DNA of 57,842 nt from Salpingoeca rosetta (taxonomy: Eukaryota; Protista; Choanoflagellata), in the NCBI GenBank assembly GCA_033442325.1, contig JAWQFM010000025.1, forward strand, positions 716,397 to 774,238, read 5' to 3'. Shown in pieces: positions 1-54,083 of this stretch. A program made the translations under genes and the position numbers. The notes below the pieces were generated by a model. The model was not told the origin of the DNA. It saw only the letters and a list, made by a program, of their open reading frames with translations, and did not search any database. Numbering within the stretch: position 1 is the stretch's first letter; every line of letters starts with the position of its first letter.

Positions 1-2292
1 GAGTTGACGGGAATGAAATACACACTGTTTGTGCCATGGACACAGGAAGATGCAGGGCTGCAAGGCAAGACTGGCAAGAGGAAAGGTCCAAATGCTCTAG
101 AATTGCTGCTGCTTGAAGAGCAGGAAGGACGGCATGAAGAAGAGCACAACAAGACGGCCGGACAACATCCAATGACGAACGTCCACACAATGTGATGTGT
201 CAAGTGGATCGATCTGTCTCTGTCACAGGTGTCTCACGCTGGTTTGGGACAGCCGTTCTCATCGATTCACCTGCATGCTTGGATGGGATGGGACAGCGCA
301 TCCCAGCAAGTCAGCATCCTCTCGATTTCGATGTGTCACACGCAGCGACAATTTGTGAACAACTTCGAAGACGTGCCGCGTGTGACACACCTATCTTGGA
401 TGGGCGTGACAATCGCATTTCGCGTTTCGCCTGCTGCTGCAGGTGCAGCGTGCGACAGACCTGACACCTTCAAACTCCCCTTGCAGCCTGCCTTCTCTCC
501 GACAGCTGCAGGTACTCCCGTGTATCTTCTATGTTCTGTGACACACTCAACTGCTTTTGTGCTTGCGTGTGCTGCGAGATGACATGGCACATCTTCGCTG
601 ACTCATGCAATGTGACATGCCAAACAACAGCGCAAGCTATGTTCTCTTGTTTCGTTTCTTCCTTCTGCTTCGACTGCAGTACTGCTTCGTGTTTGTCCAT
701 GCTATTGCGTGACTCTTCTTTCTTCCTCCTCCCCGTATGTGCTTGTGACACCACCAAACTCCCAAACCACCAAACCACAATGGTTTCGTCGCCTGCCTTC
801 GTTTCGTTTTGCCATTTTCCATGTTGTTGTCCCCACAGCCACAACGTCTGCAGCCACCCACCACAGAGATAATTTAACCCAGAAACAAAACAACCCTGAC
901 ACAAGCACCGGCAGCCCTTCCCATCGCACCTTCGCGACAGCTGCAAACAATGTTCCTGGTTCGGCGATTTGCGAGGAGAAGGAAGAACAACACAAAGAGC
1001 AAGAAGGACAAACCAAGGAAGAGCAAGAAGGACAACACGAAGAGCAAGAACAAGCAGAGGAGGACGACGACACATGGGAGGGCTGTGCCGGGGGCACGAT
1101 GCACCGCAGCTATTGACTTTGGCACAACCAACAGCGGAGCCGCGTACAAGCTCGCACAGGCAAGCGACAACGACGTCACGGCGCTGCAGTTTCCTGGTGA
1201 AAGCAACATCAAAGTGCCGACGAGCGTTGTTGTTGAGCGACAGGCGCCGCACAACGCTGTTGGGTTTGGGCCTTCAGCGACAAGCCGATATGAGGAAGGG
1301 CTGCACGCAATCTTCCACCGCTTCAAGATGCAGCTGTACAAGAACTCCCGCGCCAAGACGCTGAAGGCGGACGTGGGCGACCTGGAGCTGCCGACGGACT
1401 TGGTGATTGCACGCTGCCTGGGGCTGCTCAAGGACATGGTGCTGCAGCAGATCAAGGACCGCAACGCACTCACGCTGAGCGCGTATGAGGTGCAGTGGGT
1501 GCTGACGGTGCCTGCCATCTGGGTGGAGTCGTCCAAGGCGCTGATGCGGCGTGCGGCATTCAAGGCCGGGCTGATTGACACGGAGACCTCTGACCGGCTG
1601 CTGCTTGCGCTTGAGCCGGAGTGTGCTGCGCTGGACTGCCACGAGACGCTTGCTGCGGACCTGCTGAAGAAAAAGACCCGCTTTGTGGTGGTGGACTGTG
1701 GCGGGGGCACTGTGGACACGGCCGCGTTTGAGGTGATGCAGCCGAAGCCGAACGTGCGGCTTGAGGCGGCGCTGCCACCGCGTGGCGGCAACTGGGGTTC
1801 CACCCGCATTGACGAGAAGTTTCTGGAGTTCCTGCGCGAGCTGCTGGACAACCCGCCGTGCCTGCGCGCAAACACGTTTGCGGTGTTTGACATGCTGACG
1901 AGCGTGTGGGAGGACCGCAAGGTGAACTTTGACGTGTCACGGCTGAGCGACCCCGACGCCAGGCTGCGCATCAACCTCAACCCTGTGCTTCAAGAGATGG
2001 ACAGGCCACCCAAGCTGGTCGATGCCGTGGCCCGGTACAACAGGAAGCACCCAGGCGCGAACCTCAAGTGCTTTGGTGCTGCAAGCCTGAAGCTGACCGC
2101 TGCGCACATGAAGACGTTCTACGACGAGGTGCTGAATGACATCAAGACGCACGTGCGTGAGCTGCTGCGCGACATGGGGCGGACGGACTATGTTGTGCTT
2201 GTTGGCGGGTTTGGGGGTAGCAGCTTTGTGCGAGATGCTGTGCGGGAGGTTGCATCGGAATCGGGTGTGCAGGTGCTGATCCCACCCCGGCC
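1..2292 (+). repeat. Segmental duplication, copy A (upstream region plus HSPA12 nucleotide-binding domain); partner is 26929..29220
   Basis: Position 1 (gagttgacgggaatg...) matches 26929 at a constant offset of 26928. ORF-track translations in 1..1400 recur identically at +26928. First mismatch seen at 1473/28401; near-identity continues to about 2292/29220. The repeat probably extends left of the window. Confidence 0.95.
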
Positions 2293-2842
2293 TTGGGCCT
2301 CCATTGTCATGGGCGCCGTCAGGTTCGGTCTTTCCCGGGCTGGCTCGTGCGACCGTCATGGTGCTGAACCTGCGCTCGTGATTGTTCGGCGATCACCTCT
2401 CACGTACGGCTTTGGCACGACCAAGAACGTCACATCGTTCAAGGCTGATCACCCTGGTGTATCGTACGATGGCCGGACTGAGTTCAATCGAGACGCAGGT
2501 CAAGATCAGGTCTTGGACGTGTTCAGTACATTTGTGAAAGTGAATGACCAAGTGCCTGTTGACCGCGAAGTCAAGCACACCGTGTACCCTCTCCGCCATT
2601 CACAGACCAGTGTGCGAGTTGACCTGGTGTCCTGTCCCCGAAGTAACGTTGTGTTTACCGATGAGCATGATGTGGAACAGCATGGCTCGTGCGTCGTCGC
2701 CGTGACGGAGCGGGGCAACCGGTCCGAGAAACCAATTGATGTGAGCATGAAGTTTGGAGAGACGGAGCTGATGATGTTCGTTCATTCGCGCACAACTGGT
2801 GCCAAGGAGCGTGTGCTACTTGACTTTGACGCCACTGCTTGA
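950..2842 (+). CDS. HSPA12-like atypical Hsp70, copy 1 (intronless, 630 aa)
   Basis: Motifs AIDFGTTNSG (phosphate-1), WVLTVPAIW, ALEPECAA, VVDCGGGTVD (phosphate-2), GGNWGS, VLVGGFGGS, IVMGAVRFG, RRSPLTYG and C-terminal MKFGETE are all typical of the HSPA12 subfamily. No helical lid or EEVD. Confidence 0.93.
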   Translation: MFLVRRFARRRKNNTKSKKDKPRKSKKDNTKSKNKQRRTTTHGRAVPGARCTAAIDFGTTNSGAAYKLAQASDNDVTALQFPGESNIKVPTSVVVERQAPHNAVGFGPSATSRYEEGLHAIFHRFKMQLYKNSRAKTLKADVGDLELPTDLVIARCLGLLKDMVLQQIKDRNALTLSAYEVQWVLTVPAIWVESSKALMRRAAFKAGLIDTETSDRLLLALEPECAALDCHETLAADLLKKKTRFVVVDCGGGTVDTAAFEVMQPKPNVRLEAALPPRGGNWGSTRIDEKFLEFLRELLDNPPCLRANTFAVFDMLTSVWEDRKVNFDVSRLSDPDARLRINLNPVLQEMDRPPKLVDAVARYNRKHPGANLKCFGAASLKLTAAHMKTFYDEVLNDIKTHVRELLRDMGRTDYVVLVGGFGGSSFVRDAVREVASESGVQVLIPPRPWASIVMGAVRFGLSRAGSCDRHGAEPALVIVRRSPLTYGFGTTKNVTSFKADHPGVSYDGRTEFNRDAGQDQVLDVFSTFVKVNDQVPVDREVKHTVYPLRHSQTSVRVDLVSCPRSNVVFTDEHDVEQHGSCVVAVTERGNRSEKPIDVSMKFGETELMMFVHSRTTGAKERVLLDFDATA

Positions 2843-3176: not shown

Positions 3177-3237
<61 letters not shown>

Positions 3238-3246
3238 ACACACACA

Positions 3247-3288
<42 letters not shown>

Positions 3289-3300
3289 GAAACACACATA
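3177..3300. repeat. (CA)n microsatellite, representative of dozens of (CA/GT)n tracts in the window
   Basis: Read directly from the sequence. Confidence 0.95.
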
Positions 3301-3798
3301 CATGCGCAGCTGCGGTGCGTGGTGTTGTCTTGTTGTATCTTCTTATTTTGCCGCCCTTGCCCCAAATCTTACACACCCCATCACTACTTCAGCACTAGAC
3401 TGACTTATGCTTGCGTTCTCCTTCGAAAAGGCAAACGTTTTGTGTCATATGCGACATGGTCGCACATTCAACACAGTCAATCATGACATGGGAGGCGCCG
3501 TCCCAAACCCGCAAAGCGTGACACAACATGAGTTTGACTCAGCAAGAACTGGGTGTCACGGTTGTGAGTGATTGCTGTGCATTTTCTGTTCTTGGCTCTG
3601 CAGTCACAAGAAGCCCTCCTTTGTCTGACCAACACCCGTCAACCCCGATCAGGTAGAGGGTTTCATGTTCAAAGAAGCATGTGTGTGCTCTCATCCGTGT
3701 GTATGAAGTGAATTGCTTCCTTATACTTCCCACCACCACCACCACCACCATCACCCTATCACCACCACTACCACCAGACCACCACCAAGCGCCCTCTC

Positions 3799-10053: not shown

Positions 10054-10875
10054 GCTTCTTCTTTGCGCTTCCTCCTGCTTTTGGTCTGTGGTTGTGGCGT
10101 GAAGTTGCGTGAAGCGGCGTGAAGTTGCGGTGAGGCAACTGAGGGAAGAACAGAGGAAGAGAGCTGAGGGATGCGAGCAAAGGGAGAATGCAGGGGAGCA
10201 AGAGAACACGCGACGAAGGTTGGCACAGTGCTGAGATGCTATGCAAGTGCTGAAACGGGGGACAACAAAACAAGCAAGTGAACAAAGGAAGCAAGCTAAA
10301 CTTTAGCAATCGCCCCCTGTATGCATGGTGGTTTCGTTTTCTTTGTTCGTGTCGTTCTCTTTGTTCTTGTCGTGATGTGACCGTCGAAAGTCATCGAAAG
10401 TCGTGTCGATTGATCGGGCGAAGGACAACAAAGAGTGGGAAAGAGAGGCGGGTTTATCCGGACGATACCAGTGGCTTTTTGTGCCTGTGTTGTGTGTTTG
10501 TGTTGTGTGTGTGTGTGCGTGTGTGCGTGTGTGCGTGTGTGCGTGTGCGTGTGTTTGTTTGTTTGTGTGTGTGTGCGTGTGTGCGTGTGTGCGAGTGTGC
10601 GTGTGCGTGTGTTTGTTTGTGTGTGTGTGTGTGTGTGTTGTGTGTGTGTAGGTGTGTGTTGTGTGTGTGCGTGTTTACACTCTTACTCTTGCCAGGACCT
10701 TGACGTTCAACGGCGAAGAACGTGTTTAATCATCCATCAGCAGCAAGAAGCACAACATCACGTGGTCAACGATGGTCAACAGCACCAGCAAAGACATACA
10801 ATACAATCAGACACACCCGTACACGTACACACGCATACAAACGCACACAACATACATACAAATGCGCACGCACGC

Positions 10876-12939: not shown

Positions 12940-12982
12940 GCCCCTACAACAGGACCAGCTGAACTAGCACTAAGGACACGTA

Positions 12983-13060
12983 CGCAAGCAGCCGCAAGCA
13001 GTCGGAAGCAGTCGGAAGCAGTCGGAAGCAGTCGCAAGCAGTCGGAAGCAGTCGGAAGCG
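12983..13060 (+). repeat. 10-bp tandem repeat (GTCGGAAGCA) x~8 abutting the HSPA12 copy 2 ATG
   Basis: cgcaagca gccgcaagca gtcggaagca gtcggaagca gtcggaagca gtcgcaagca gtcggaagca gtcggaagcg ATG. Confidence 0.92.
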
Positions 13061-14842
13061 ATGGATGCTAGAAGGTCAAGCAGCACAAGGAAGCCCGCTG
13101 TGAAGTGCACGGCTGCCCTTGAGTTTGGCACAACCAACAGCGCAGCGGCATACGCGCTGGCGGGCTCCCAGGACATCACGGCGCTGCAGTTTCCCGGCGC
13201 AACCAACATCAAAGTGCCGACGAGCGTTGTTGTTGAGCGACAGGCGCCGCACAACGCTGTTGGGTTTGGGCCCTCAGCGACAGAGTGTTATGAGGAGGAC
13301 CAGCACGCAATCTTCCACCGCTTCAAGATGCAGCTGTACAAGAACTCCCGCGCCAAGACGCTGAAGGCGGACGTGGGCGACCTGGAGCTGCCGACGGACT
13401 TGGTGATTGCACGCTGCCTGGGGCTGCTCAAGGACATGGTGCTGCAGCAGATCAAGGACCGCAACGCACTCAACGTGAGCGCGTATGAGGTGCAGTGGGT
13501 GCTGACGGTGCCTGCCATCTGGGAGGAGTCGTCCAAGGCGCTGATGCGGCGTGCGGCATTCAAGGCCGGGCTGATTGACACGGAGACCTCTGACCGGCTG
13601 CTGCTTGCGCTTGAGCCGGAGTGTGCTGCGCTGGACTGCCACGAGACGCTTGCTGCGGACCTGCTGAAGCGGGGGACGCGGTATGTGGTGGTGGACTGTG
13701 GCGGGGGCACGGTGGACACGGCCGCGTTTGAGGCGATGCAGCCGAAGCCGAACGTGCGGCTTGAGGCGGCACTGCCACCGCGCGGCGGCAACTGGGGCTC
13801 CACCCGCATTGACGAGAAGTTTCTGGAGTTCCTGCGCGAGCTGCTGGACAACCCGCCGTGCCTGCGCGCAAACACGTTTGCGGTGTTTGACATGCTGACG
13901 AGCGTGTGGGAGGACCGCAAGGTGAACTTTGACGTGTCACGGCTGAGCGACCCCGACGCCAGGCTGCGCATCAACCTCAACCCTGTGCTTCAAGAGATGG
14001 ACAGGCCACCCAAGCTGGTCGATGCCGTGGCCCGGTACAACAGGAAGCACCCAGGCGCGAACCTCAAGTGCTTTGGTGCTGCAAGCCTGAAGCTGACCGC
14101 TGCGCACATGAAGACGTTCTACGACGAGGTGCTGAATGACATCAAGACGCACGTGCGTGAGCTGCTGCGCGACATGGGGCGGACGGACTATGTTGTGCTT
14201 GTTGGCGGGTTTGGGGGTAGCAGCTTTGTGCGAGATGCTGTGCGGGAGGCTGCATCGGAATCGGGTGTGCAGGTGCTGATCCCACCCCGGCCTTGGGCCT
14301 CCATCGTCATGGGCGCCGTCAGGTTCGGTCTGTCCCGGGCTGGCTCGTGCGACCACCCTGGTGCTGCTGCTGCGATTGTCATGGTCCGGCGGTCACCTTT
14401 CACGTACGGCATTGAATCGAGCATGAATGTGGCATCGTTCAAGGCTCATCACCCTGGTGTGTCGCACGATGGCCGCACGGAATGGAACCCTGACTCCAAG
14501 GAGTACGATGTGAAGAAGTTATTTCTGACATTTGTCAAGGCGAACGACAAGGTGCCTATCGACCACGAGGTCAAGCACACTGTGTGCCCTGCTCGTGATT
14601 TGCAGTCTAGTGTGCGAGTGAACCTGGTGTTGTGTCCCCGAAGCAACGTAGTGTTTTCTGATGACAAGGATGTTGAGCAGCATGGATCAGGGTCAGTGGC
14701 AGTGAAGTCCGGAGGGAAGTGGTCAGACAAACACATCGATGTGAGCATGAAGTTTGGAGAGACGGAGCTGATGATGTTCGTTCATTCGCGCACAACTGGT
14801 GCCAAGGAGCGCGTGCTTCTCAACTTTGACCACACTGCTTGA
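13061..14842 (+). CDS. HSPA12-like atypical Hsp70, copy 2 (intronless, 593 aa)
   Basis: Same HSPA12 motifs as copy 1; collinear with copy 1 at a 12000-nt offset. Phosphate-1 reads ALEFGTTNS (D->E). Confidence 0.93.
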   Translation: MDARRSSSTRKPAVKCTAALEFGTTNSAAAYALAGSQDITALQFPGATNIKVPTSVVVERQAPHNAVGFGPSATECYEEDQHAIFHRFKMQLYKNSRAKTLKADVGDLELPTDLVIARCLGLLKDMVLQQIKDRNALNVSAYEVQWVLTVPAIWEESSKALMRRAAFKAGLIDTETSDRLLLALEPECAALDCHETLAADLLKRGTRYVVVDCGGGTVDTAAFEAMQPKPNVRLEAALPPRGGNWGSTRIDEKFLEFLRELLDNPPCLRANTFAVFDMLTSVWEDRKVNFDVSRLSDPDARLRINLNPVLQEMDRPPKLVDAVARYNRKHPGANLKCFGAASLKLTAAHMKTFYDEVLNDIKTHVRELLRDMGRTDYVVLVGGFGGSSFVRDAVREAASESGVQVLIPPRPWASIVMGAVRFGLSRAGSCDHPGAAAAIVMVRRSPFTYGIESSMNVASFKAHHPGVSHDGRTEWNPDSKEYDVKKLFLTFVKANDKVPIDHEVKHTVCPARDLQSSVRVNLVLCPRSNVVFSDDKDVEQHGSGSVAVKSGGKWSDKHIDVSMKFGETELMMFVHSRTTGAKERVLLNFDHTA

Positions 14843-15326
14843 CCTTCGCTTCGTGGCTTTCTGGCTGGAGACTGCACCATGCATGCGCGACGTTTGTGGT
14901 GAATCCAAGTGCTCTGCACTCTCCTGGCTTGTTTGCATATTGTACATTCCACCTTGTTTCTTCTGCGTCGCCCTCTGTCTTGTTTCAACGCACACATTAA
15001 ATACACTACGTTCGACCACGATGAACGCAATACTTTGTGAGTTTGGGCGGCAGCGTTTCGGGGTCCAAGTCACGCGTTCGCGCAGTGGATGCATGGGAGA
15101 GGTTGGTATTGGTGAATTCATCATGGCTCTTCAAACCAGCGTGCCTCTGTACTTTGGAATCAATGCACGTGGTTGTAAGGCTCATTGCGTCAAGGTGTTT
15201 ACTTCACAGTTTGTGGCAACGTAACAGAATGAGGGAGAAAGATGGGTATTGAGAGTAAGAAGGCATTGGGGGAGGTGAGAGTAGCAACAAGAACGAAGGC
15301 ATGCGGAAAGGGACGGTGAGGCTCAG

Positions 15327-16802
15327 TCATGGCCGAGCATACGAACATGTTGGACAGACGCACGTAGCACAGCTGGGGAATGGCGAGCAATCACAAGTCG
15401 CAACATTCCCGAAGCAGGCGTTGGAGGGAGGGTGATGAGCAGGGAGGCCGAGCACCTTTCGCTTGCGATGGGCAAACGTTGAAGCTTGTGTGCAAACGTA
15501 CGTCTGAGACAGCTTGTGGTCAGCCTCATACGTAGCAGCGTGGGGCTGCGAGTCCTGCACCGCAGCCGTAACCTCGTGCTGTGCTGGCTGGAGTTGGTGC
15601 TCGCTGATGGTCGGTTCGGTTGTGTTCCAGGATACCTTGTGTGAAGAAGCACTTTCATTCTTCATGCATTCGACACAATCGCCGTCAGCAGACGATGCTG
15701 AAGAGACAGTCAACTGGGAATCGCAGTCCGTGTCTTTGACGCAGTCAGTGTCGGTGCACACCCCTGTCCCCGCGCTCGGAGCCTCGTGGACTTGGTGTGG
15801 ATCAGTATGCATGTTTTCCTGGGGTTCCCACAGGTACTTCGCCTCGGCAAGCACCGCCTTCGTCTGTCCATTGCACCACACCAGTGCAGGAAGCACCAAC
15901 GTTATCTTTGCAGCGACGTTCTTCTGCGGTAGCAGGTCAAGGTACTGCTTTCTGTCAACGTGCTGCGAGTCCTGGCAGGTGGAGTCGATGTCGATGGGAG
16001 GATCAGTGAGAATGCAAGCCATGAAGATGGGAAGCAAGTGGCGGCGCATCTGCTGCAGTCCACGCGTGTTCACCGTGCAAGCCCCATCATTCGCGGCAGC
16101 TTGTGTGCTCCACAGGTGGAAGCTGTTCTGAAGGCAGTATCGCACATGCGCATCTCCGGGCTGAACATGCGAGATTTCCGCAAGCTGTTGGCACTTGGCG
16201 CGAACAACATTCTCGGCATGGGCATACACGGCTTGAATGTCTGCCAGGAGTGCGGCTGGCTGCAGCTCTCCTTCCAACAGCTCTTCCAGCACCTCGCATT
16301 GCATCTCAATGCACGACGTGTACTTGCGCGCAAGCTCGTATGGCGTCGGAAACCCGCTGTTGAGGCGGATGCCTTGGGTCGTCACGGTGGACGCTGCGCG
16401 GGCCTCTTCAAGCGCATTCAGTTCGGCGTTCAAGCCATTCAGGCGGTGGATCATCCGGCGCACATGGTCGTCAGCATGCGGTAGCATCTGAACCACAACG
16501 GTTGACGATGTGTTCAACGCATAGGTGCTGCCAGGTTGCCGTGTCAGATGTACGACAGGGTGGCTGGGCTCAGAGTGCTTGGAATGATGAACAATCACGT
16601 CTGATTGGTCAACTACCACCAACGCCTTGGTGAACGCACACCGCAGTGTGGCAGCAAACGACCCGCCGCTCTGGACTTGGTCCTCATTGAGAGGCGTCAC
16701 TCTGACCAGAACGGGTCGTTTGTACACATTCCAGCCATTGCGATTGGTCATTTCTTGGAAGAAATGGACTCCATTCTTCAAGCACACCAAGCCAAACTGC
16801 AT
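15327..16802 (-). CDS. Uncharacterised MIEAP-C/GrpE-head-like protein, subtype B, copy B2; frame open to 16919, start uncertain
   Basis: ATLRCAFT, QGIRLNSGFPTPYELARKYTSCIEMQ, IFMACILTDPPI and LVLPALVWCNGQ..VLAEAKYLWEP match 3799..5157. Confidence 0.75.
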   Translation of the reverse strand: MQFGLVCLKNGVHFFQEMTNRNGWNVYKRPVLVRVTPLNEDQVQSGGSFAATLRCAFTKALVVVDQSDVIVHHSKHSEPSHPVVHLTRQPGSTYALNTSSTVVVQMLPHADDHVRRMIHRLNGLNAELNALEEARAASTVTTQGIRLNSGFPTPYELARKYTSCIEMQCEVLEELLEGELQPAALLADIQAVYAHAENVVRAKCQQLAEISHVQPGDAHVRYCLQNSFHLWSTQAAANDGACTVNTRGLQQMRRHLLPIFMACILTDPPIDIDSTCQDSQHVDRKQYLDLLPQKNVAAKITLVLPALVWCNGQTKAVLAEAKYLWEPQENMHTDPHQVHEAPSAGTGVCTDTDCVKDTDCDSQLTVSSASSADGDCVECMKNESASSHKVSWNTTEPTISEHQLQPAQHEVTAAVQDSQPHAATYEADHKLSQTYVCTQASTFAHRKRKVLGLPAHHPPSNACFGNVATCDCSPFPSCATCVCPTCSYARP

Positions 16803-20329: not shown

Positions 20330-24665
<4,336 letters not shown>

Positions 24666-26928: not shown

Positions 26929-29220
26929 GAGTTGACGGGAATGAAATACACACTGTTTGTGCCATGGACACAGGAAGATGCAGGGCTGCAAGGCAAGACT
27001 GGCAAGAGGAAAGGTCCAAATGCTCTAGAATTGCTGCTGCTTGAAGAGCAGGAAGGACGGCATGAAGAAGAGCACAACAAGACGGCCGGACAACATCCAA
27101 TGACGAACGTCCACACAATGTGATGTGTCAAGTGGATCGATCTGTCTCTGTCACAGGTGTCTCACGCTGGTTTGGGACAGCCGTTCTCATCGATTCACCT
27201 GCATGCTTGGATGGGATGGGACAGCGCATCCCAGCAAGTCAGCATCCTCTCGATTTCGATGTGTCACACGCAGCGACAATTTGTGAACAACTTCGAAGAC
27301 GTGCCGCGTGTGACACACCTATCTTGGATGGGCGTGACAATCGCATTTCGCGTTTCGCCTGCTGCTGCAGGTGCAGCGTGCGACAGACCTGACACCTTCA
27401 AACTCCCCTTGCAGCCTGCCTTCTCTCCGACAGCTGCAGGTACTCCCGTGTATCTTCTATGTTCTGTGACACACTCAACTGCTTTTGTGCTTGCGTGTGC
27501 TGCGAGATGACATGGCACATCTTCGCTGACTCATGCAATGTGACATGCCAAACAACAGCGCAAGCTATGTTCTCTTGTTTCGTTTCTTCCTTCTGCTTCG
27601 ACTGCAGTACTGCTTCGTGTTTGTCCATGCTATTGCGTGACTCTTCTTTCTTCCTCCTCCCCGTATGTGCTTGTGACACCACCAAACTCCCAAACCACCA
27701 AACCACAATGGTTTCGTCGCCTGCCTTCGTTTCGTTTTGCCATTTTCCATGTTGTTGTCCCCACAGCCACAACGTCTGCAGCCACCCACCACAGAGATAA
27801 TTTAACCCAGAAACAAAACAACCCTGACACAAGCACCGGCAGCCCTTCCCATCGCACCTTCGCGACAGCTGCAAACAATGTTCCTGGTTCGGCGATTTGC
27901 GAGGAGAAGGAAGAACAACACAAAGAGCAAGAAGGACAAACCAAGGAAGAGCAAGAAGGACAACACGAAGAGCAAGAACAAGCAGAGGAGGACGACGACA
28001 CATGGGAGGGCTGTGCCGGGGGCACGATGCACCGCAGCTATTGACTTTGGCACAACCAACAGCGGAGCCGCGTACAAGCTCGCACAGGCAAGCGACAACG
28101 ACGTCACGGCGCTGCAGTTTCCTGGTGAAAGCAACATCAAAGTGCCGACGAGCGTTGTTGTTGAGCGACAGGCGCCGCACAACGCTGTTGGGTTTGGGCC
28201 TTCAGCGACAAGCCGATATGAGGAAGGGCTGCACGCAATCTTCCACCGCTTCAAGATGCAGCTGTACAAGAACTCCCGCGCCAAGACGCTGAAGGCGGAC
28301 GTGGGCGACCTGGAGCTGCCGACGGACTTGGTGATTGCACGCTGCCTGGGGCTGCTCAAGGACATGGTGCTGCAGCAGATCAAGGACCGCAACGCACTCA
28401 ACGTGAGCGCGTATGAGGTGCAGTGGGTGCTGACGGTGCCTGCCATCTGGGAGGAGTCGTCCAAGGCGCTGATGCGGCGTGCGGCATTCAAGGCCGGGCT
28501 GATTGACACGGAGACCTCTGACCGGCTGCTGCTTGCGCTTGAGCCGGAGTGTGCTGCGCTGGACTGCCACGAGACGCTTGCTGCGGACCTGCTGAAGCGG
28601 GGGACGCGGTATGTGGTGGTGGACTGTGGCGGGGGCACGGTGGACACGGCCGCGTTTGAGGCGATGCAGCCGAAGCCGAACGTGCGGCTTGAGGCGGCAC
28701 TGCCACCGCGCGGCGGCAACTGGGGCTCCACCCGCATTGACGAGAAGTTTCTGGAGTTCCTGCGCGAGCTGCTGGACAACCCGCCGTGCCTGCGCGCAAA
28801 CACGTTTGCGGTGTTTGACATGCTGACGAGCGTGTGGGAGGACCGCAAGGTGAACTTTGACGTGTCACGGCTGAGCGACCCCGACGCCAGGCTGCGCATC
28901 AACCTCAACCCTGTGCTTCAAGAGATGGACAGGCCACCCAAGCTGGTCGATGCCGTGGCCCGGTACAACAGGAAGCACCCAGGCGCGAACCTCAAGTGCT
29001 TTGGTGCTGCAAGCCTGAAGCTGACCGCTGCGCACATGAAGACGTTCTACGACGAGGTGCTGAATGACATCAAGACGCACGTGCGTGAGCTGCTGCGCGA
29101 CATGGGGCGGACGGACTATGTTGTGCTTGTTGGCGGGTTTGGGGGTAGCAGCTTTGTGCGAGATGCTGTGCGGGAGGCTGCATCGGAATCGGGTGTGCAG
29201 GTGCTGATCCCACCCCGGCC
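26929..29220 (+). repeat. Segmental duplication, copy B of 1..2292; 28231..29220 also appears identical to 13303..14292
   Basis: Direct comparison; identical shadow ORFs at offsets of 26928 and 14928. Confidence 0.95.
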
Positions 29221-29740
29221 GTGGGCCTCCATCGTCATGGGCGCTGTCAGGTTTGGTCAGTGCGGGGGCGTTACCATCGCTGCAAGGCGGTCCGCCCTCA
29301 CGTACGGCATTGGCAGCAGCGTTGCGGAATCTGTGTTCAAGCGTGACCACCCAGATGTTGATGCCGGCCGTCGCGTGCGCCACAATGCCCAGAAGAAGAT
29401 GAATGTTGTGTCCAACGTGTTTACGCCGTTTGTGCGCGCCAATGACAAGGTTCCTGTTGACCATGAGGTGCGGCAGTGTTTCCACCCGATGTACCTTGAG
29501 CAGCGGCGTGCGACTGTGCCCATCCTCTCGAGCCATCGCCGTGACGTCGTTTTCTCCGATGACAAGTCGCATGTGCGGGAGGAGTGTCGCGTGCCGTTTC
29601 CCGTTGAGGCGTTGGGCTGGCGCAACACGCCGTTGGAAGTGCGAATGAAGTTTGGACAGACAGAGGTTATGGTGTTCCTCAAGTCCAGCATGACTGGCGA
29701 GGAGAAGCGTGTGCCAGTGACGTTTACTTCATCCGCGTGA
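27878..29740 (+). CDS. HSPA12-like atypical Hsp70, copy 3 (intronless, 620 aa)
   Basis: Same HSPA12 motifs. N-terminus equals copy 1, ATPase core equals copy 2, and the C-terminal domain after GAVRFG is unique. Confidence 0.93.
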   Translation: MFLVRRFARRRKNNTKSKKDKPRKSKKDNTKSKNKQRRTTTHGRAVPGARCTAAIDFGTTNSGAAYKLAQASDNDVTALQFPGESNIKVPTSVVVERQAPHNAVGFGPSATSRYEEGLHAIFHRFKMQLYKNSRAKTLKADVGDLELPTDLVIARCLGLLKDMVLQQIKDRNALNVSAYEVQWVLTVPAIWEESSKALMRRAAFKAGLIDTETSDRLLLALEPECAALDCHETLAADLLKRGTRYVVVDCGGGTVDTAAFEAMQPKPNVRLEAALPPRGGNWGSTRIDEKFLEFLRELLDNPPCLRANTFAVFDMLTSVWEDRKVNFDVSRLSDPDARLRINLNPVLQEMDRPPKLVDAVARYNRKHPGANLKCFGAASLKLTAAHMKTFYDEVLNDIKTHVRELLRDMGRTDYVVLVGGFGGSSFVRDAVREAASESGVQVLIPPRPWASIVMGAVRFGQCGGVTIAARRSALTYGIGSSVAESVFKRDHPDVDAGRRVRHNAQKKMNVVSNVFTPFVRANDKVPVDHEVRQCFHPMYLEQRRATVPILSSHRRDVVFSDDKSHVREECRVPFPVEALGWRNTPLEVRMKFGQTEVMVFLKSSMTGEEKRVPVTFTSSA

Positions 29741-30470: not shown

Positions 30471-33400
30471 CGCGTACCTGTGTACTGGAGGCGTTTGCCG
30501 TCCTGGAGAAGAGCGTGGAGGGTGTGCAGTAGAGGCCCGCGGAAGCCGTTGGGTCGCTCCTGTGCAATGAGGTCTGGGTCACACTGTGTTGCCACCTCCC
30601 ACATGAGGACGCCAAAGCTGAACACATCCGCCTGCGCGTCGTACGTCTCGCCTCCCAGCACCTCCGGCGCCATGTACATTGGCGTGCCCACACCCGCCGT
30701 GAGTGAGAGGTGCATGGATTCCGATCCAACGCCCTGCAAGTACTGCATGTCAAACGCCGTGTCAGCGGTGTGCAATGGCGACATGGCTGTTGCACGCGCG
30801 TCCGTGTCGGCTCGTGTCAGACACTGGCGGATAGATCCAAAGTCGGTGATCTTCGCGCGCAGTGTGCTTGACACCAGGACATTCCCGCTTTTGATGTCCC
30901 TGAATCAAACACCAGTGTGGGATTGATGAGGGTGAGTTTATGTCAGTCAGGGTGTGCAACTTAAAAGGGCTCAGCAAGAGTCAACTACGTTGTAAGGGCA
31001 AGCCTTCAAGATGCAGCCAAGAAATCACACTCTCCAAGCACACACACATGTGCATCCGCACGCACACACACACACACACACAGACACACACACACACACA
31101 CAGACACACACACACACAGACAAACACAGACAAACACACACACGCGCTTGCACACACCTGTGCACGTGTCCAAGGGAGTGGATGAATGCAATGCCGGCGG
31201 CCACATCACGAAGAAGACGCAGCTTGAGGTCCCACACTGTCAGCAGGTCGGCAATGGAGGCGCGCTGGGCCTGAAGACCGGTGGTGACAAGCAGCATGTC
31301 TTCGCTGGCGTCCACCACGCCCATGTCTGGTTCATGTGAGGCCGATGCTTGTTCCTGCCGCTGCTGTTGCTGCTGCTGTTCGGCCTGCACCTGGAGGAGG
31401 ACAACACCAAGATCGCCAGCGAGGAGGTTGCGCAGAGAGCCGAGCGGCACATACTCAAGCACAATGAAGGGGCTGCCGTGCGGGTTGGTGCCAGCACCGA
31501 AGAAACGAACCACGTTCGGGTGGCGCGTGCGTTGGAGGAACTCCACCTCCTTTTCAAACTCGAAGCGGGTGGTCTCGTCAAACTCAAGCGCCTGATGCTG
31601 CAGCACCTTGACGGCGACAGTGAGGGTGTCCCACTTTGCCATGAAGACGGTGCCAAACGCGCCCGCAGCGACACGCTTCACCAGCTGCAATTCGTCAAAC
31701 TCCACTTCCCACACCTTCTTCAGGGCAAGCACTTCCTGCTCGCGCTCGTCAATGAGCAGCTGCTTCACGTCGTTGTCGTGCTGCAGGAGCACCTGGTACC
31801 GCAGCGTCCTGCGCACGCGCCAGACAATGAGGAGCACGACGAGGACAAAGAGGATGGATCCGCCGGCACTGAGGGCTGCAATGCGGATGAGGGCACGGTC
31901 GTCCACCACGCACACACCACCGCGAGGCCGGAACCCGCGTGCACACTGACACTTGAGGAAGAAGCCGGGCTTGATGTTGAAGTCATCCACATTCATGCTT
32001 TCGCCATCAAATGGCCGCACGTCCTCCGTTGTAAGACGAACGTTGCATTGAATGGGCAGATCTTCCAAGATGAGAAGCGGGATGGTTTTGCGCGAGGGAA
32101 AGTCGAACACCAGGTCGATGGGACGCAAGTTGTCCTGCTCGGTGAGCAATGTCACGCGCGAGGCAGCTCCTGACAGCAAGTTGTACGTGTTCAAAGCCCT
32201 ATTTCCTGATAGGTCAATGACGTCGATGAGGTTTAGGCAGTGTTGAAGCAAGCCTCCAACACGGGCAGCAGTAAGCTGCTTGATGTCGAGACCGAGGTCA
32301 CGTGCAAACACCATGCGTTGGCCCCAAATCGTACAAAACGCGCTGGAAGGAATGATGCGCGTCTTGCTAATGTCCAGGATGTCCACGACAGATGCATGTA
32401 GGGTGGTGAGCTCTGTACAACCGGACACATTCAGCTGCGCAACATCGTCAAACACCGTGACGGATGTGACGTGCGTGTTGTCTTGGAGAAACACCAGCTC
32501 GTAGTCCTTGCGTTCGCATGTGGTAATGTTGGTGTAGGCGGTGTGCACAAGACCAAACTCGCGCACGTTTGCCCCAAGGATGTTGCACAGCGCCTGCAAG
32601 GGAACGGAGCTCTCGTGCATGCCCGGCCAGCCCAACACAAGGCGCCTTAGAGACATCTTCGCCTCTTTCAAAGCAGGTACGACCTCTGGGCTCAGCTCGA
32701 CGTTCTCCAAGCTTAGCGTGTCAAGCGTTGTAAGGTTCGTGTTGAGGGCCTCTTCTTCATGCAGGAGTGCGCGCGAAGTTCCTGGATGCTCGTCCTGAGA
32801 CAGCGCATCCAGCTCGAGCACAGACATGCTGGGGTTGCTCAGAAACGGCGCAAGATCAATATCTTTGATGGTGTGGCCGTTCATGAGAAGTCCGCGCAGG
32901 CTGGGAAAATGGCTCATGTCTGGCTGCTGGGTGAGCTTGTTGAAGCTCAGGTCAACGTCACTCAGGTGCGGAAGTTTGTGGTTGAACTCCTTGAGCTCGT
33001 TGTGGGCGATGGAAAGCGCAACAATTGGCACGTTGCGGAACAGGCCTGGCGGGAGCGAGTGCAGTTTGTTGCGCGTGAGCACGAGAAAATTCAAGCCAGT
33101 GTTGTTCTGGAAAATACGCTCAGGTAGAGTCGTGAGCAGGTTGTTGCTTAGGTGGAGATGTTGAAGTGAAGGGCAGTGCTGGAACAGGGCCTCGTCGATT
33201 GTTTTGATGCGGTTATCGTCGAGAAAGAGACGGAAGAGCGCAGGATGGTTTTGGAAAAGAGTGGCGGGCAGACTGGTGAGGTCGTTGTTTGTGAAGACGA
33301 CTTCCGTGAGCTGGTTCGCGTTTAGAAACAGGTCGCTGTCGAGGACGCTTAGCTGCGCGTTGCGAATCCGCACGAGCTTCAGCCGGCGTGTGTTGTGAAA

Positions 33401-34959
33401 AACGCGAGGCGGCAGTTTTTGGATGCGCGTGTCTGTGAGCTGAAGCTCTTCCAGGAGCGTGAGGGTATCAAAGACGCCATTTGGCAAGTCCTCGATCGGG
33501 TTGTAGCTGAGATCGAGGTGGGTGAGAGCCGTGAGCCTGTCAAATAAGCCGTCAGGTATCTCGATGTCGTTGGAAGCGAGGCTCAGCACACGCAGACTCA
33601 ACAGGTTGTCGAATGCATCCTGAGTGATGTGGCGAATGATGTTGTTGTCCAGCTTGAGTGTGACGAGCGAGGAAGGCAAGGCGGTTTGCAGCGAACCCCC
33701 CACGCTTGTGAGGAGGTTGTGAGAGACGTGAAGATCTTGCAGGGCCGTGAAACCTTGCAGCGCGTGGCTTGGCAAGGCGATGAAGTGGCTGTGCGAGATG
33801 TTTAGGAAACGAAGGGTGTCTGCAAAGGCTGGTGGGTCATTGGCAGCGCAGTGGGTCGAGGGGGGTCCCGAGAAGGCGAAGATGCGGCTGTGGCTGAGAT
33901 CGAGGCGACGCAAGGATTCAAATGCGTTGTATGTCTGCAGGCATTCGCTGCGGCGCGTGTCGTCCTTAATGTGGAGCGAGGGCACGTGCGCCCACGACCC
34001 GTGCTCAAGCACCCACGCAAGCCCACGCTTGTTGCTGTGAGGGTTCCCCAGAAACACGACATGCTGTATGTTGGGGCTGGAAGTGAGGGCCGCGAGCGCT
34101 CCTGCTGCCGCTTCTTCTTCCTTGGCTGTTGACGGCACGTCGTCCTTTTTGAATTGAGAGAAATCCAGTTGTAGCGTGACGTTGGCTGACTTCTGCGCGA
34201 CATTGTCACAGTCCCCCAGCAGCACTTCCGTCACCGTGCAAGACACGACCGTTGGCGGCACTCCGGTCCGCAGCAGCGCGTTGGAGGCAGAGGCGCGGCG
34301 CCTTCGCTTTGACCTTGGCGGTGTCGCTGAAATCTCTGTGTGGGATGTGGGGGTCTGTGGTGGTGTTGTTTGGGTAAGTTGGGGGGAGAGGTTGTGTGGT
34401 GGTGATGGTGGCGAAGCGATGGAAGTCGTTGAGCGTGAGCATACGTGTGTGCGTGTGTGTATGTGCGTGTGTGCGTATGTGTGTGTGCGTATGTATGCGT
34501 GTGAGTGAGTGTGTGCGTATGTGTGTGTGCGTATGTATGCGTGTGAGTGAGTGTGTGTGTGTGTGAGTGTGTGTTTGGGATTGGAAGAGGGCGGGCGAAA
34601 TACGCAACGTGGGTGGTTTCTTTGTCAGGTTACATTACCACACTGAGTGTGGCGAGGGCATCACTTTCTTACATTTTGGTGTCTGTTGTTATGAATCTCG
34701 GGCCTGTTGTTGGGTGACGGTGGTCCTGACGGCTCCGTTTGTGCGCACGTCGTGTCATAGAGGTGCTGGAGGGCCAGCAGATCCATGGCGTCGAGTTGGA
34801 CTGTGACCGAAGCTGGTGAAACAAACGCCGCGCGTGAAACGCGTTCAGCAGTCTGAGAAGAGCGATAAGACGTGGTCCGCAGCGGTGGCACACCTGAGTG
34901 TGTGTTGTTGCCTTGCCCAAGGCGAACCTGATTTAACGTGCGCCAGTTGTTGTTGCTGG

Positions 34960-47202: not shown

Positions 47203-52430
<5,228 letters not shown>

Positions 52431-52790: not shown

Positions 52791-54083
52791 ATGGCGACGA
52801 TGAAGATGATGCGCGCTCCTTCTTCCTGCTGTTGTCGTTCTTGTTTGACTGTTGTTGTTGTTGTGGCAGTGGTTGTGGCAGTGTCTGCGGCATGCGTGCG
52901 GGTGTGTGAAGGGTCGTTCATGCTTGAGGATGCAGAGGGCGCAGTGCACGTGAACACAACGGACGGCGGGGCGCAGCAGCGCGTGCTGTTCAATGGACAG
53001 GACGTTGTGGAGCGCCTGCAGCGCCTTGAACGGCAGGAAGCCGTGATGGCAGCGCGCCTCTTGGCTGGGGTGTGTGCACTGGAGCCGAACCTGCACACGG
53101 TGGACACGACGAGCGTGCAGATTGACGTGTCGGAGTACACGGAGCCCACGTTCAAGTGGCAGGGCGGCGTGCTTGCGCCCAACGGCAAGATCTACGCGCC
53201 CCCAGTTGGACAGGGTGTCGGTTCCATGCTCATCCTGGACCCCGACACAAGCACGGTCGATGTGACGACGCTCAGCGGCTGGCCAGAGGCCGTGGCGCTC
53301 ACGCGCGGAGCGGTGCTTGCGCCGTCCACCACCAACAAGATCTACACCATCCCCGGCGACGCAACAGCGGTGGCTATCGTGGACCCGGCCACCAACGCCG
53401 TGGACATGACCACCATCACGGGCCTCGCGACGACACAGGACAAGTGGCGCGAAGGTGTGGTGGCGCGCAACAACAAGATCTACGCCATCCCCAGCTGGTC
53501 CGAGAGCGTGCTTGTGATTGACCCGGCAACAAACGCGACAGACACGACGGCACTTGCGGGGCTCACGGGCACGTTCAAGTGGCTGGGCGGCGTGCTTGCA
53601 GGCAACGGCAAGATTTACGGCATCCCGAGCCTTGCCGCAGGAGTGCTGATCATCGACCCGGAGACCAACACCACGGACACGACGACGATGGGCGGGTTTG
53701 AAACCACCGGCAAGTGGGCGGGCGGGGTGCTTGCAGGCAATGGCAAGATATACGGCATCCCTGTGCAGATCAGCAAGGTGCTGATCATCGACCCCGACAC
53801 GGACACGTACGACGTGACGAGCATCTCCGACTTGCCCAGCGGTGGCGGTGCGTGGTTGGGCGGCGTGCTTGCAGGCAACGGCAAAATCTATGGCATCCCG
53901 TACAGCTCCACATCCGTGCTCATCATTGACCCTGACACCGACACGGCCGACACCACCAGCATCTCGGGCTTGCCCGACGAAGGCGGCAAGTGGCGTGGCG
54001 GTGTGCTTGCAGGCAACGGCAAGATTTATGGTACGCCGTTTTATTCCGCCTCTGCGCTCATCATTGATCCCATCTGTGGCTGA
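52791..54083 (+). CDS. Signal/TM-anchored protein with seven ~45-aa KWxGGVLAxNGKIYGIP...VLIIDP repeats (probable 7-bladed beta-propeller); intronless
   Basis: 430-aa ATG-to-TGA ORF with a hydrophobic N-terminal stretch, a short coiled segment and seven clearly alignable repeats. Confidence 0.82.
   Translation: MATMKMMRAPSSCCCRSCLTVVVVVAVVVAVSAACVRVCEGSFMLEDAEGAVHVNTTDGGAQQRVLFNGQDVVERLQRLERQEAVMAARLLAGVCALEPNLHTVDTTSVQIDVSEYTEPTFKWQGGVLAPNGKIYAPPVGQGVGSMLILDPDTSTVDVTTLSGWPEAVALTRGAVLAPSTTNKIYTIPGDATAVAIVDPATNAVDMTTITGLATTQDKWREGVVARNNKIYAIPSWSESVLVIDPATNATDTTALAGLTGTFKWLGGVLAGNGKIYGIPSLAAGVLIIDPETNTTDTTTMGGFETTGKWAGGVLAGNGKIYGIPVQISKVLIIDPDTDTYDVTSISDLPSGGGAWLGGVLAGNGKIYGIPYSSTSVLIIDPDTDTADTTSISGLPDEGGKWRGGVLAGNGKIYGTPFYSASALIIDPICG

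What the first reader, a model, noticed from the sequence alone, without database searches (positions are those of the whole stretch)
2355..2737. Homogenised ATPase domain but hypervariable substrate-binding cassette in the HSPA12 copies
Seen: the nucleotide-binding domain is nearly nucleotide-identical in all three copies, but divergence starts abruptly just after the domain-end motif GAVRFG. Copies 1 and 2 differ heavily over ~2355-2737 / 14355-14737 (e.g. FGTTKNVTSFKADHPGVSYDGRTEFNRDAGQDQV vs IESSMNVASFKAHHPGVSHDGRTEWNPDSKEYDV) with no net indel. They become identical again at 2738-2811 / 14738-14811 (DVSMKFGETELMMFVHSRTTGAKE). Copy 3 is divergent from ~29258 to the stop. Inference: a constant engine with a variable recognition module, typical of diversifying recognition or arms-race proteins rather than housekeeping chaperones.
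Basis: partly seen in the sequence, partly recalled or inferred. Interest (0 to 1): 0.85.

Follow-up and report, generated by a model that had tools for sequence, protein, structure and literature searches.

The report
Gene conversion keeps three HSPA12-like ATPases alike
Three neighbouring HSPA12-like chaperone genes of the choanoflagellate Salpingoeca rosetta share an almost identical ATPase domain because recent gene conversion copied it between them, while their peptide-binding-type tail domains kept an old, ordinary divergence under purifying selection, with no sign of an arms race.

Summary
The window is Salpingoeca rosetta. It holds three intronless HSPA12-like ORFs: c1 950-2842, c2 13061-14842 and c3 27878-29740.

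- **ATPase domains:** they are 96-98% nucleotide-identical.
- **Region after GAVRFG:** c1 and c2 are about 71% identical over 2355-2737, with no gaps. They are 100% identical over 2738-2811. c3 is about 50% identical to both.
- **Fold of the variable region:** it models confidently as an Hsp70 substrate-binding beta-sandwich (SBD-beta) without the helical lid, so the label "substrate-binding module" holds.

The arms-race inference does not hold.

- **Silent sites:** four-fold sites differ by 0.34-0.61 in the tail against 0.035-0.073 in the ATPase domain.
- **Selection:** omega is 0.21-0.45, and no 30-codon window exceeds 0.67.
- **Where changes fall:** at columns that vary across the whole family.
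- **Rates:** relative-rate tests are clock-like.
- **Copy number:** the genome holds only three such tails.

The ATPase domain is a clean mosaic. c3 equals c1 on the 5' side and c2 in the middle. At equal tail divergence (36%), c1-c3 ATPase domains are 98% identical, against 65% for c1 and a foreign homologue.

This is concerted evolution by partial gene conversion, which is well known in Hsp70 families.

The parts
950..2842 (+). Copy 1 (c1), HSPA12-like gene, annotated PTSG_10884; intronless ORF of 630 aa
1097..2329 (+). c1 nucleotide-binding (actin-fold ATPase) domain, residues 50-460, ending in GAVRFG
   Evidence: The AF2 model aligns to Hsp70 NBDs with Z 28-33. The phosphate-1, phosphate-2 and adenosine motifs are invariant in alignment A1.
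2330..2842 (+). c1 linker plus SBD-beta-like C-terminal domain (residues 461-630); no helical lid
2355..2737 (+).
2738..2811 (+). 74-bp tract 100% identical to c2 14738-14811: a short conversion tract inside the tail domain (strands beta6-beta8 by homology)
   Evidence: Permutation P<5e-5, and P = 1.5e-4 on third positions. In run X1 there is a separate 74-bp contig at about 2x depth.
1..1472 (+). Stretch 100% identical to 26929-28400 (c3): 949 bp upstream, the basic N-terminal tail and the first third of the NBD. The identity runs to the edge of readable sequence.
13061..14842 (+). Copy 2 (c2), 593 aa; own promoter region and short N-terminus; tail domain 14330-14842
13303..14292 (+). c2 stretch 100% identical to c3 28231-29220; c1 differs here at 18 sites
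14355..14737 (+). c2 counterpart of the variable segment
27878..29740 (+). Copy 3 (c3), annotated PTSG_10893, 620-aa ORF; a chimera of c1-like 5' part and c2-like middle
29258..29740 (+). c3 tail domain: 36-39% aa identity to c1 and c2, with all family-invariant framework residues kept

Best explanation
Three old paralogues of an HSPA12-type Hsp70-like protein lie within 29 kb in Salpingoeca rosetta. Each has an actin-fold ATPase domain, a linker and a lidless SBD-beta-type client-binding domain.

Recurrent interlocus gene conversion, some of it very recent, has overwritten the ATPase-coding part. Between c1 and c3 it has also overwritten at least 949 bp of upstream DNA. These parts are therefore nearly identical.

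The tail domains have mostly escaped conversion. They retain the divergence accumulated since the duplications, filtered by purifying selection at the family's usual pace.

The sharp edge at GAVRFG is where homology between donor and recipient ends. In c3 a 30-nt indel and about 50% identity lie just beyond it. Once a segment is this diverged, conversion tracts can no longer extend into it, so the edge maintains itself.

Shown here: the mosaic, the silent-site contrast, omega below 1, clock-like rates and the fold.

Inferred: the conversion mechanism itself, the direction of the events, and that the tails bind different clients.
For: 1. Mosaic. Over 1105-1302 there are 31 consecutive informative sites with c1=c3 and c2 different. 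Over 1473-2250 there are 18 consecutive sites with c2=c3 and c1 different. No c1=c2 site occurs before 2293. c1 and c3 have zero differences over 1-1472.

2. Silent sites. Four-fold-site divergence is 0.035-0.073 in the NBD, against 0.34 (c1-c2) and 0.61 (c3) in the tail. dS is 0.04-0.07 against 0.65-1.7.

3. Calibration with a foreign homologue, P0004 (56% identity overall). c1-P0004 is 65% identical in the NBD and 36% in the tail. c1-c3 is 98% in the NBD and 36.5% in the tail.

4. Trees. The tail domain gives (P0004,(c3,(c1,c2))) with support 97/92 and long branches. In the NBD tree the three copies lie within 0.04 substitutions per site.

5. Selection. Omega is 0.30-0.45 by Nei-Gojobori. 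By maximum likelihood it is 0.216 for the tail against 0.125 for the NBD, and 0.21 for the three copies alone. The highest 30-codon window is 0.67. The ratio of synonymous to non-synonymous differences does not differ between domains for c1-c2 (Fisher P = 1.0).

6. Replacements fall at family-variable columns (Mann-Whitney P = 0.004 for c1-c2 and 4e-5 for c1-c3). All near-invariant framework residues are kept.

7. Relative-rate tests are flat. c3 against c1 with P0004 as outgroup gives 20 against 17 unique changes. The S. rosetta copies against P0004 are not significant in either domain.

8. A 74-bp identical tract inside the tail shows that conversion also acts there.

9. GC3 is 0.78-0.81 in the NBD and 0.59-0.71 in the tail. 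Of the 13 weak/strong differences between c1 and c2=c3, 11 carry G or C in c2=c3. This is compatible with GC-biased conversion.

10. Contigs from other runs reproduce c2 exactly and break at paralogue junctions.

11. Concerted evolution by gene conversion is documented for Hsp70 genes in yeast SSB1/2, Drosophila hsp70 and human HSPA1A/B (PMC3879978).
Against: - Only three copies and one close outgroup are available, so site-level positive selection at a few residues cannot be excluded.
- dS against c3 is saturated, so those omega values are rough.
- Omega of 0.2-0.45 is high for an Hsp70. A published survey gives about 0.14 for HSPA12 and 0.016-0.08 for canonical Hsp70 (PMC12692333).
- The c3 breakpoint coincides with the domain boundary. 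This is not explained by passive homology loss alone, because it does not say why homology first ended there.
- c1's 5' part is identical to c3 and abuts at least 3.4 kb of N. That part of the assembly could not be checked independently.
- The direction and number of conversion events are not determined.
Confidence: 0.78

Rival explanations
1. Selection-maintained modularity. Gene conversion would homogenise the whole gene, but converted tails are removed by selection because the three SBD-beta modules bind different clients. The domain-boundary edge is then adaptive (sub- or neofunctionalised paralogues protected from conversion), though not an arms race.
For: - The c3 breakpoint falls within the GAVRFG codons at the structural end of the NBD.
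- Conversion is active enough to give 1.0-1.5 kb tracts with no differences, and it reaches into the tail only as a 74-bp tract in the conserved beta6-beta8 part.
- Positions equivalent to the DnaK cleft loops differ among the copies. This is inferred from the profile alignment and the alignment.
- The HSPA12A tail binds a specific client (PMC6345817).
- The model of selection against conversion in yeast SSB is cited in PMC3879978.
Against: - No test here separates it from a passive homology barrier.
- c1-c2 silent divergence rises gradually into the tail (pS 0.26-0.29, then 0.6-0.9). This looks like nested tracts of different ages rather than a fixed wall.
- At 11 cleft-equivalent positions recalled from the DnaK structure, 5 differ between c1 and c2. 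This is not clearly above the 31% background.
Confidence: 0.3
2. The tail is a hypervariable recognition cassette under diversifying selection, or subject to targeted mutation, as in arms-race proteins.
For: - The variable part is a binding-type domain.
- The highest pN/pS windows (0.64-0.67) lie over the beta1 / loop 1,2-equivalent stretch.
- HSPA12 genes are expanded in bivalves (PMC10939072, listed).
Against: - Omega is 0.21-0.45 and no window exceeds 1.
- Silent sites are as diverged as replacement sites predict.
- Rates are clock-like against the outgroup, with no acceleration in the S. rosetta lineage.
- There are only three cassettes and no silent donor copies in 55 Mb.
- Changes follow the family's ordinary variability profile.
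Confidence: 0.06
3. Assembly artefact. Reads of diverged paralogues were collapsed or cross-assigned, so the near-identity of the ATPase domains and the perfect chimera in c3 would not be real.
For: - c1's identical 5' part starts at the edge of at least 3.4 kb of N.
- The window holds two further N runs.
- Exact repeats of 1-1.5 kb are hard for older assemblers.
Against: - Contigs of two runs from other studies match c2 over 12949-15400 with no differing letter.
- Those contigs break at the junctions expected from the three-copy structure: a 125-bp piece at 13640-13764 spans the c1-specific variant cluster plus 30 nt on each side, and a 74-bp piece lies at 14738-14811.
- Depth is higher over the shared parts.
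- The paralogue-specific sites form long uninterrupted runs rather than a scatter.
Confidence: 0.05
4. Domain shuffling. One recent ATPase-coding segment was joined to three unrelated or foreign tail cassettes by recombination, rather than old paralogues being homogenised.
For: Sharp junctions at a domain boundary, and a second modular junction at the 5' end, where c2 has its own promoter and N-terminus.
Against: - The three tails are each other's closest relatives and are monophyletic against P0004 (97/92).
- No other tail-type sequence exists in the genome.
- No closer relative of the c3 tail turned up among 5.8 billion or 1.8 billion proteins.
- Within the NBD there are tracts of different ages: 15% divergence at 1105-1302, 2% at 1473-2250, and 0% elsewhere.
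Confidence: 0.05

Closest known systems
Animal HSPA12A/HSPA12B (atypical Hsp70 subfamily)
   Same: - These are the best named relatives: 26-31% identity over more than 90% of the length, with E 1e-47 to 1e-73.
- The length and architecture are the same.
- The tail framework is shared (RRS..TYG, F..FV, Y.P, FG.TE, TG).
- The human HSPA12A C-terminal part binds a client in an ADP/ATP-dependent way (PMC6345817).
   Different: - These are choanoflagellate genes, intronless, with a lineage-specific triplication.
- c1 and c3 carry a long lysine/arginine-rich disordered N-terminus.
- Identity to animal members is only about 28%.
- The Pfam HSP70 model scores below its threshold.
Canonical Hsp70/DnaK
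   Same: - The whole model superposes on ATP-state DnaK/BiP: model 50-626 on DnaK 2-505, Z 29-33, rmsd about 4.2-4.6 A.
- The tail alone matches only SBD-beta structures (TM 0.58-0.61).
- The profile of the tail finds only DnaK SBDs in the PDB sequence search, weakly (E 0.04-0.2).
   Different: - There is no alpha-helical lid and no EEVD motif.
- About 33 extra residues (a helix plus a hairpin) sit between beta1 and beta2.
- Sequence identity is 11-19%.
- The interdomain linker is not the VLLLD type.
Concerted evolution of Hsp70 paralogues by gene conversion (yeast SSB1/SSB2, Drosophila hsp70Aa/Ab/B, human HSPA1A/HSPA1B)
   Same: Paralogues within a species are kept near-identical by non-reciprocal exchange with sharp tract ends, while neighbouring DNA diverges (PMC3879978).
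   Different: In those cases the tract usually covers the whole coding region. Here it covers one domain, plus the promoter for one pair, and leaves the client-binding domain diverged. The copies are 12-15 kb apart with unrelated genes between them.

Membership tests
Hsp70 superfamily, HSPA12 subfamily | Actin-fold ATPase domain with phosphate-1 (DxGTT), phosphate-2 (DxGGGT) and adenosine (GG) motifs | tested here: met
   In alignment A1, D249, G251-G253, T254, D256 and G419 are invariant, and D56, F57, G58, T59 and G420 are nearly invariant. The fold matches Hsp70 NBDs with Z 28-33. c2 has E in place of D56.
Hsp70 superfamily, HSPA12 subfamily | Closest named relatives are HSPA12A/B rather than canonical Hsp70, Hsp110 or HSPA13/14 | tested here: met
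   named hits are HSPA12A/B or 12A/B-like (E 1e-47 to 1e-73). Full-length alignment extends through the tail.
Hsp70 superfamily, HSPA12 subfamily | Passes the Pfam HSP70 (PF00012) gathering score | tested here: not met
   c1 scores 16.9 bits against a cut-off of 20.6, and c2 and c3 give no hit. Many bona fide HSPA12A entries also carry no Pfam hit, so this model is a weak criterion for the subfamily.
Canonical Hsp70 (DnaK type) | SBD-beta sandwich after the NBD | tested here: met
Canonical Hsp70 (DnaK type) | Alpha-helical lid (SBD-alpha) and C-terminal EEVD or equivalent | tested here: not met
   The protein ends about 5 residues after the last beta strand. The superposition stops at DnaK residue ~505.
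Concerted evolution by interlocus gene conversion | Segment-wise phylogenetic incongruence with long uninterrupted runs of one site pattern | tested here: met
   31 consecutive c1=c3 sites, then 18 consecutive c2=c3 sites. The domain trees disagree in depth.
Concerted evolution by interlocus gene conversion | Identity extends to silent sites and to non-coding DNA in converted tracts | tested here: met
   Four-fold sites differ by 0.035-0.073 against 0.34-0.61. 949 bp upstream are 100% identical between c1 and c3.
Concerted evolution by interlocus gene conversion | GC-biased outcome | tested here: inconclusive
   GC3 is 0.78-0.81 in the NBD against 0.59-0.71 in the tail, and 11 of 13 weak/strong differences favour G or C in c2=c3. 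The changes are not polarised, and codon-usage effects are not excluded.
Diversifying (arms-race) recognition gene family | dN/dS above 1 in the variable module or part of it | tested here: not met
   Omega is 0.21-0.45, and the highest window is 0.67.
Diversifying (arms-race) recognition gene family | Lineage-specific acceleration of the variable module | tested here: not met
   Tajima relative-rate tests are all non-significant.
Diversifying (arms-race) recognition gene family | Large or rapidly turning-over repertoire, or silent donor cassettes | tested here: not met
   Exactly three tail-type sequences were found in the 55-Mb genome.
Diversifying (arms-race) recognition gene family | Variable residues concentrated on the binding surface | not testable with these tools
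   Model coordinates are not exposed, so solvent exposure could not be computed. Strand versus non-strand enrichment is not significant.

The most novel reading that the evidence does not exclude
The three SBD-beta tails are functionally distinct client-recognition modules. Selection actively protects them from an otherwise pervasive conversion process, so one shared and continually homogenised ATPase engine drives three specificities. Two promoter/N-terminus types are layered on top. This would be a modular HSPA12 adaptor system in a close unicellular relative of animals.
Probability: 0.3. Interest if true: 0.5.

Novelty: new member of a known kind. Interest (0 to 1): 0.3.

Why it matters
It is a clean, small example of domain-limited concerted evolution in the Hsp70 superfamily, in a choanoflagellate where genetic tools exist.

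It is also a caution. A 'constant domain plus variable domain' pattern among paralogues can arise entirely from where conversion tracts stop, without any diversifying selection.

As a by-product, the modelling indicates that the HSPA12 C-terminal region is a lidless SBD-beta with an insertion between beta1 and beta2. This gives a structural frame for the poorly understood HSPA12 proteins.

It does not open a new class of system.

Tried and rejected
- **Pfam on the tail alone:** no family.
- **Word-indexed protein search with the c3 tail:** only itself.
- **Exhaustive phmmer with the c3 tail:** nothing closer than 36% (P0004). No orthologue-level calibration of the c3 tail was therefore possible.
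- **Literature search for PTSG_10884 / PTSG_10893:** nothing.
- **Nucleotide BLAST of c1 against c2:** it reported 20 gap openings. This is an artefact of aligning diverged coding DNA, because the codon alignment is gapless.
- **Apparent long c3 branch in the tail tree:** I took it as a sign of acceleration, but relative-rate tests did not confirm it, so I dropped it.
- **Unitig depths as copy numbers:** single-copy depth itself varies between 20 and 38 in run X1. I therefore use only the 74-bp piece and the positions of the breaks.
- **RNA evidence:** only one stretch could be laid. Run X18 gave 22 reads in all. A few fall on the c2-specific tail (depth about 1), and all have the first mate on the minus strand. 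Run X17 gave one read. This shows weak sense transcription of c2. c1 and c3 were not tested.
- **c2 annotation status:** the listing hides sources for window-encoded proteins, so I make no claim about it.
- **Mapping variable residues onto the model surface:** not possible, because coordinates are not returned.

Full report
**Origin and genes**

The best protein hits are 100% identical to Salpingoeca rosetta PTSG_10884 and PTSG_10893. The window is G000:C25:716397-774238 of a 55-Mb assembly. Three uninterrupted ORFs encode HSPA12-like proteins: c1 at 950-2842, c2 at 13061-14842 and c3 at 27878-29740.

Unrelated genes lie between them, including an ion-channel-like ORF, a WD40 ORF and a TPR ORF. 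Outside the three genes, self-comparison of the window finds only microsatellites. A profile search of the whole genome finds these three loci and two distant Hsp70-like loci. A profile of the tail domain finds only these three.

**Checking the observation**

A codon alignment gives these nucleotide identities:

| Pair | ATPase domain | GAVRFG to IDVSMKFG |
|---|---|---|
| c1-c2 | 95.8% | 72.3% |
| c1-c3 | 98.2% | 47.5% |
| c2-c3 | 97.1% | 48.5% |

- c1 and c2 align without gaps through 2355-2737 / 14355-14737.
- The run 2738-2811 / 14738-14811 is 74 bp with no difference. No uniform permutation out of 20,000 gave a run that long. The same test on third codon positions gave P = 1.5e-4.
- c3 leaves the other two at 2317-2331, within and just after the GAVRFG codons, and it has a 10-codon deletion there.
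- For c1-c2 the divergence rises in steps rather than abruptly.

**What the variable region is**

An AlphaFold2 model of c1 built on a 36-sequence alignment has mean pLDDT 83.6. Only the N-terminal 46 residues and the linker 466-472 are disordered.

- The model superposes on full-length ATP-state DnaK and BiP: model 50-626 on DnaK 2-505, Z 29-33, rmsd 4.2-4.6 A, 455-466 residues aligned.
- The tail folded alone has pLDDT 93.4. Its top 50 Foldseek matches are all Hsp70 peptide-binding domains (TM 0.57-0.61, E 3e-7 to 8e-6, rmsd about 3 A).
- A sequence profile of the tail finds almost only DnaK SBDs among PDB sequences (14 of 15 listed matches). The match is weak (E 0.04-0.2) and aligns profile positions 43-146 with DnaK 406-502.

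The tail is therefore an SBD-beta homologue. It has no helical lid. It carries about 33 extra residues between beta1 and beta2.

The domain is present across the family with a conserved framework. In human HSPA12A the C-terminal part was the client-binding fragment in a two-hybrid screen, and binding responded to ADP and ATP (PMC6345817). 'Substrate-binding module' is therefore a fair name, although binding was not tested here.

**Why the two domains differ**

The contrast is present at silent sites:

| Measure | ATPase domain | Tail, c1-c2 | Tail, against c3 |
|---|---|---|---|
| Four-fold degenerate sites differing | 0.035-0.073 | 0.34 | 0.61 |
| dS | 0.04-0.07 | 0.65 | 1.5-1.7 |

So the domains differ in the age of their last common ancestor, not in selection on amino acids.

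The ATPase domain is a mosaic:
- Over 1105-1302 all 31 informative sites group c1 with c3.
- 1303-1472 is identical in all three copies.
- Over 1473-2250 all 18 informative sites group c2 with c3.
- c1 and c3 have no difference at all over 1-1472, which includes 949 bp upstream of the start codon.

A foreign homologue, P0004, comes from two Logan assemblies and is 56% identical overall. It calibrates the expectation. At the same tail identity (36%), c1 and P0004 have 65% identical ATPase domains, whereas c1 and c3 have 98%.

Trees agree. The tails give (P0004,(c3,(c1,c2))) with long branches and 97/92 support. The ATPase domains of the three copies lie within 0.04 substitutions per site.

GC3 is higher in the homogenised part (0.78-0.81 against 0.59-0.71). 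Eleven of 13 weak/strong differences carry G or C in c2=c3. This is compatible with GC-biased conversion but is not polarised.

**Tests of diversifying selection**

- **Nei-Gojobori dN/dS in the tail:** 0.30 for c1-c2 and 0.37-0.45 against c3. In the ATPase domain it is 0.27-0.44, from few changes.
- **Maximum-likelihood omega (GY+F3X4):** 0.216 for the tail and 0.125 for the ATPase domain with P0004 included. It is 0.21 for the three tails alone.
- **Sliding windows:** no 30-codon window between c1 and c2 exceeds pN/pS 0.67. The most diverged stretch (codon columns 505-545) has pS 0.6-0.9 and pN/pS about 0.35.
- **Where replacements fall:** in columns that vary across the family (Mann-Whitney P = 0.004 for c1-c2 and 4e-5 for c1-c3). 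They are not enriched in non-strand positions.
- **Framework:** all near-invariant residues survive in all three copies.
- **Relative rates:** c3 against c1 with P0004 as outgroup gives 20 against 17 unique changes, and c1 against c2 gives 10 against 9. Each copy against P0004, averaged over 32 outgroups, is not significant in either domain.
- **Repertoire:** the genome holds no further tail cassettes that could act as donors.

**Is the assembly trustworthy?**

Contigs from two runs of other studies (X1, which is probably DNA, and X14) match c2 over 12949-15400 with no differing letter.

They break at paralogue junctions:
- A 125-bp piece at 13640-13764 equals the c1-specific variant cluster 1670-1734 plus 30 nt on each side.
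- One piece ends at 14292, the last base before the first c3-specific site.
- A 74-bp piece lies at exactly 14738-14811, with depth 43.5 between neighbours at 20 and 21.3 in X1.

One caveat remains. Everything upstream of window position 1 reads N for at least 3.4 kb. The upstream end of the c1=c3 repeat is therefore unknown, and c1's 5' part was not independently verified.

**Expression**

One RNA run gave 22 reads on the c2 stretch. A few fall on the c2-specific tail, and all have the first mate on the minus strand. This is weak sense transcription.

**Mechanism and what stays open**

The best-supported account is old triplication followed by repeated partial gene conversion. Conversion tracts stop where homology stops.

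Why homology first ended at the domain boundary is not settled. One option is a passive, self-reinforcing barrier, helped by the 30-nt indel in the disordered linker. The other is selection against converted tails. The gradual rise of silent divergence in c1-c2 and the 74-bp tract inside the tail favour nested tracts of different ages. The exact coincidence of the c3 breakpoint with the end of the ATPase domain keeps the selective version alive (about 0.3).

By the profile alignment and motif similarity for beta1, positions equivalent to the DnaK cleft loops do differ among the copies. This mapping is my own inference, and the DnaK contact residues are recalled from memory. The excess is not clear: 5 of 11 recalled contact positions differ between c1 and c2, against 31% overall.

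**Comparison with what is known**

Concerted evolution by conversion is well documented in Hsp70 genes (PMC3879978). Here it is limited to one domain and acts between copies 12-15 kb apart.

HSPA12 is reported as the least conserved Hsp70 group, with Ka/Ks about 0.14 (PMC12692333). The values here are somewhat higher but well below 1.

**Verdict**

- Observation: confirmed.
- Structural label: supported.
- Arms-race interpretation: not supported.
- Classification: a new member of a known kind.
- Interest: moderate to low.

Noticed in passing
G000:C25:713000-716396 (immediately upstream of window position 1); L006: At least 3.4 kb directly upstream of the window reads N, either an assembly gap or a withheld stretch. 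The c1=c3 exact repeat runs right up to this edge, so its true upstream extent is unknown.
   Followed up: partly
window 13121-13123 (c2 residue 21): c2 has Glu where the family's phosphate-1 motif has a nearly invariant Asp (AALEFGTT against AIDFGTT). This lies in the 5' part of c2 that has not been converted. The effect on ATPase activity is unknown.
   Followed up: no
window 12986-13059: A 10-bp tandem repeat (AAGCAGTCGG, 7.4 copies) abuts the c2 start codon. c2 has a promoter region and N-terminus unrelated to those of c1 and c3.
   Followed up: no
window 950-1096 and 27878-28024: c1 and c3 share a lysine/arginine-rich, disordered N-terminal tail of about 49 residues (pLDDT 30-40). c2 and the foreign homologue P0004 lack it. 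It may be a localisation signal.
   Followed up: no
window 1-950 against 26929-27877; proteins P0001 and P0003: The public gene models are inconsistent. PTSG_10884 carries a 59-aa N-terminal extension and PTSG_10893 does not, although the upstream DNA is 100% identical. PTSG_10893 also has 5 residues beyond the in-frame stop at 29738-29740, which implies a predicted 3' intron.
   Followed up: partly
window 31025-34261 (minus strand): A long ORF with eight LRR_8 matches followed by a tyrosine/serine-threonine kinase domain. It looks like a receptor kinase and lies just downstream of c3.
   Followed up: no
window 53708-54071: A 138-bp tandem repeat (2.3-2.6 copies, 74-77% matches) inside coding-looking sequence.
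   Followed up: no
window-wide, e.g. 3177-3302, 10486-10674, 22060-22227, 47964-48070: Very dense (CA)n/(TG)n and related microsatellites lie between genes, and they dominate the window's self-similarity.
   Followed up: no
proteins P0121 (394 aa) and P0124 (1089 aa): Metagenomic proteins that match pieces of the c3 tail domain in 6-7 separate stretches. They may be tandem arrays of part of the SBD-beta-like fold.
   Followed up: no
G000:C12:211236-211790 and G000:C27:165342-165635: Two further, distant Hsp70-like NBD matches to the HSPA12 profile (E 8e-16 and 2e-6) elsewhere in the genome. Neither has the tail domain.
   Followed up: no
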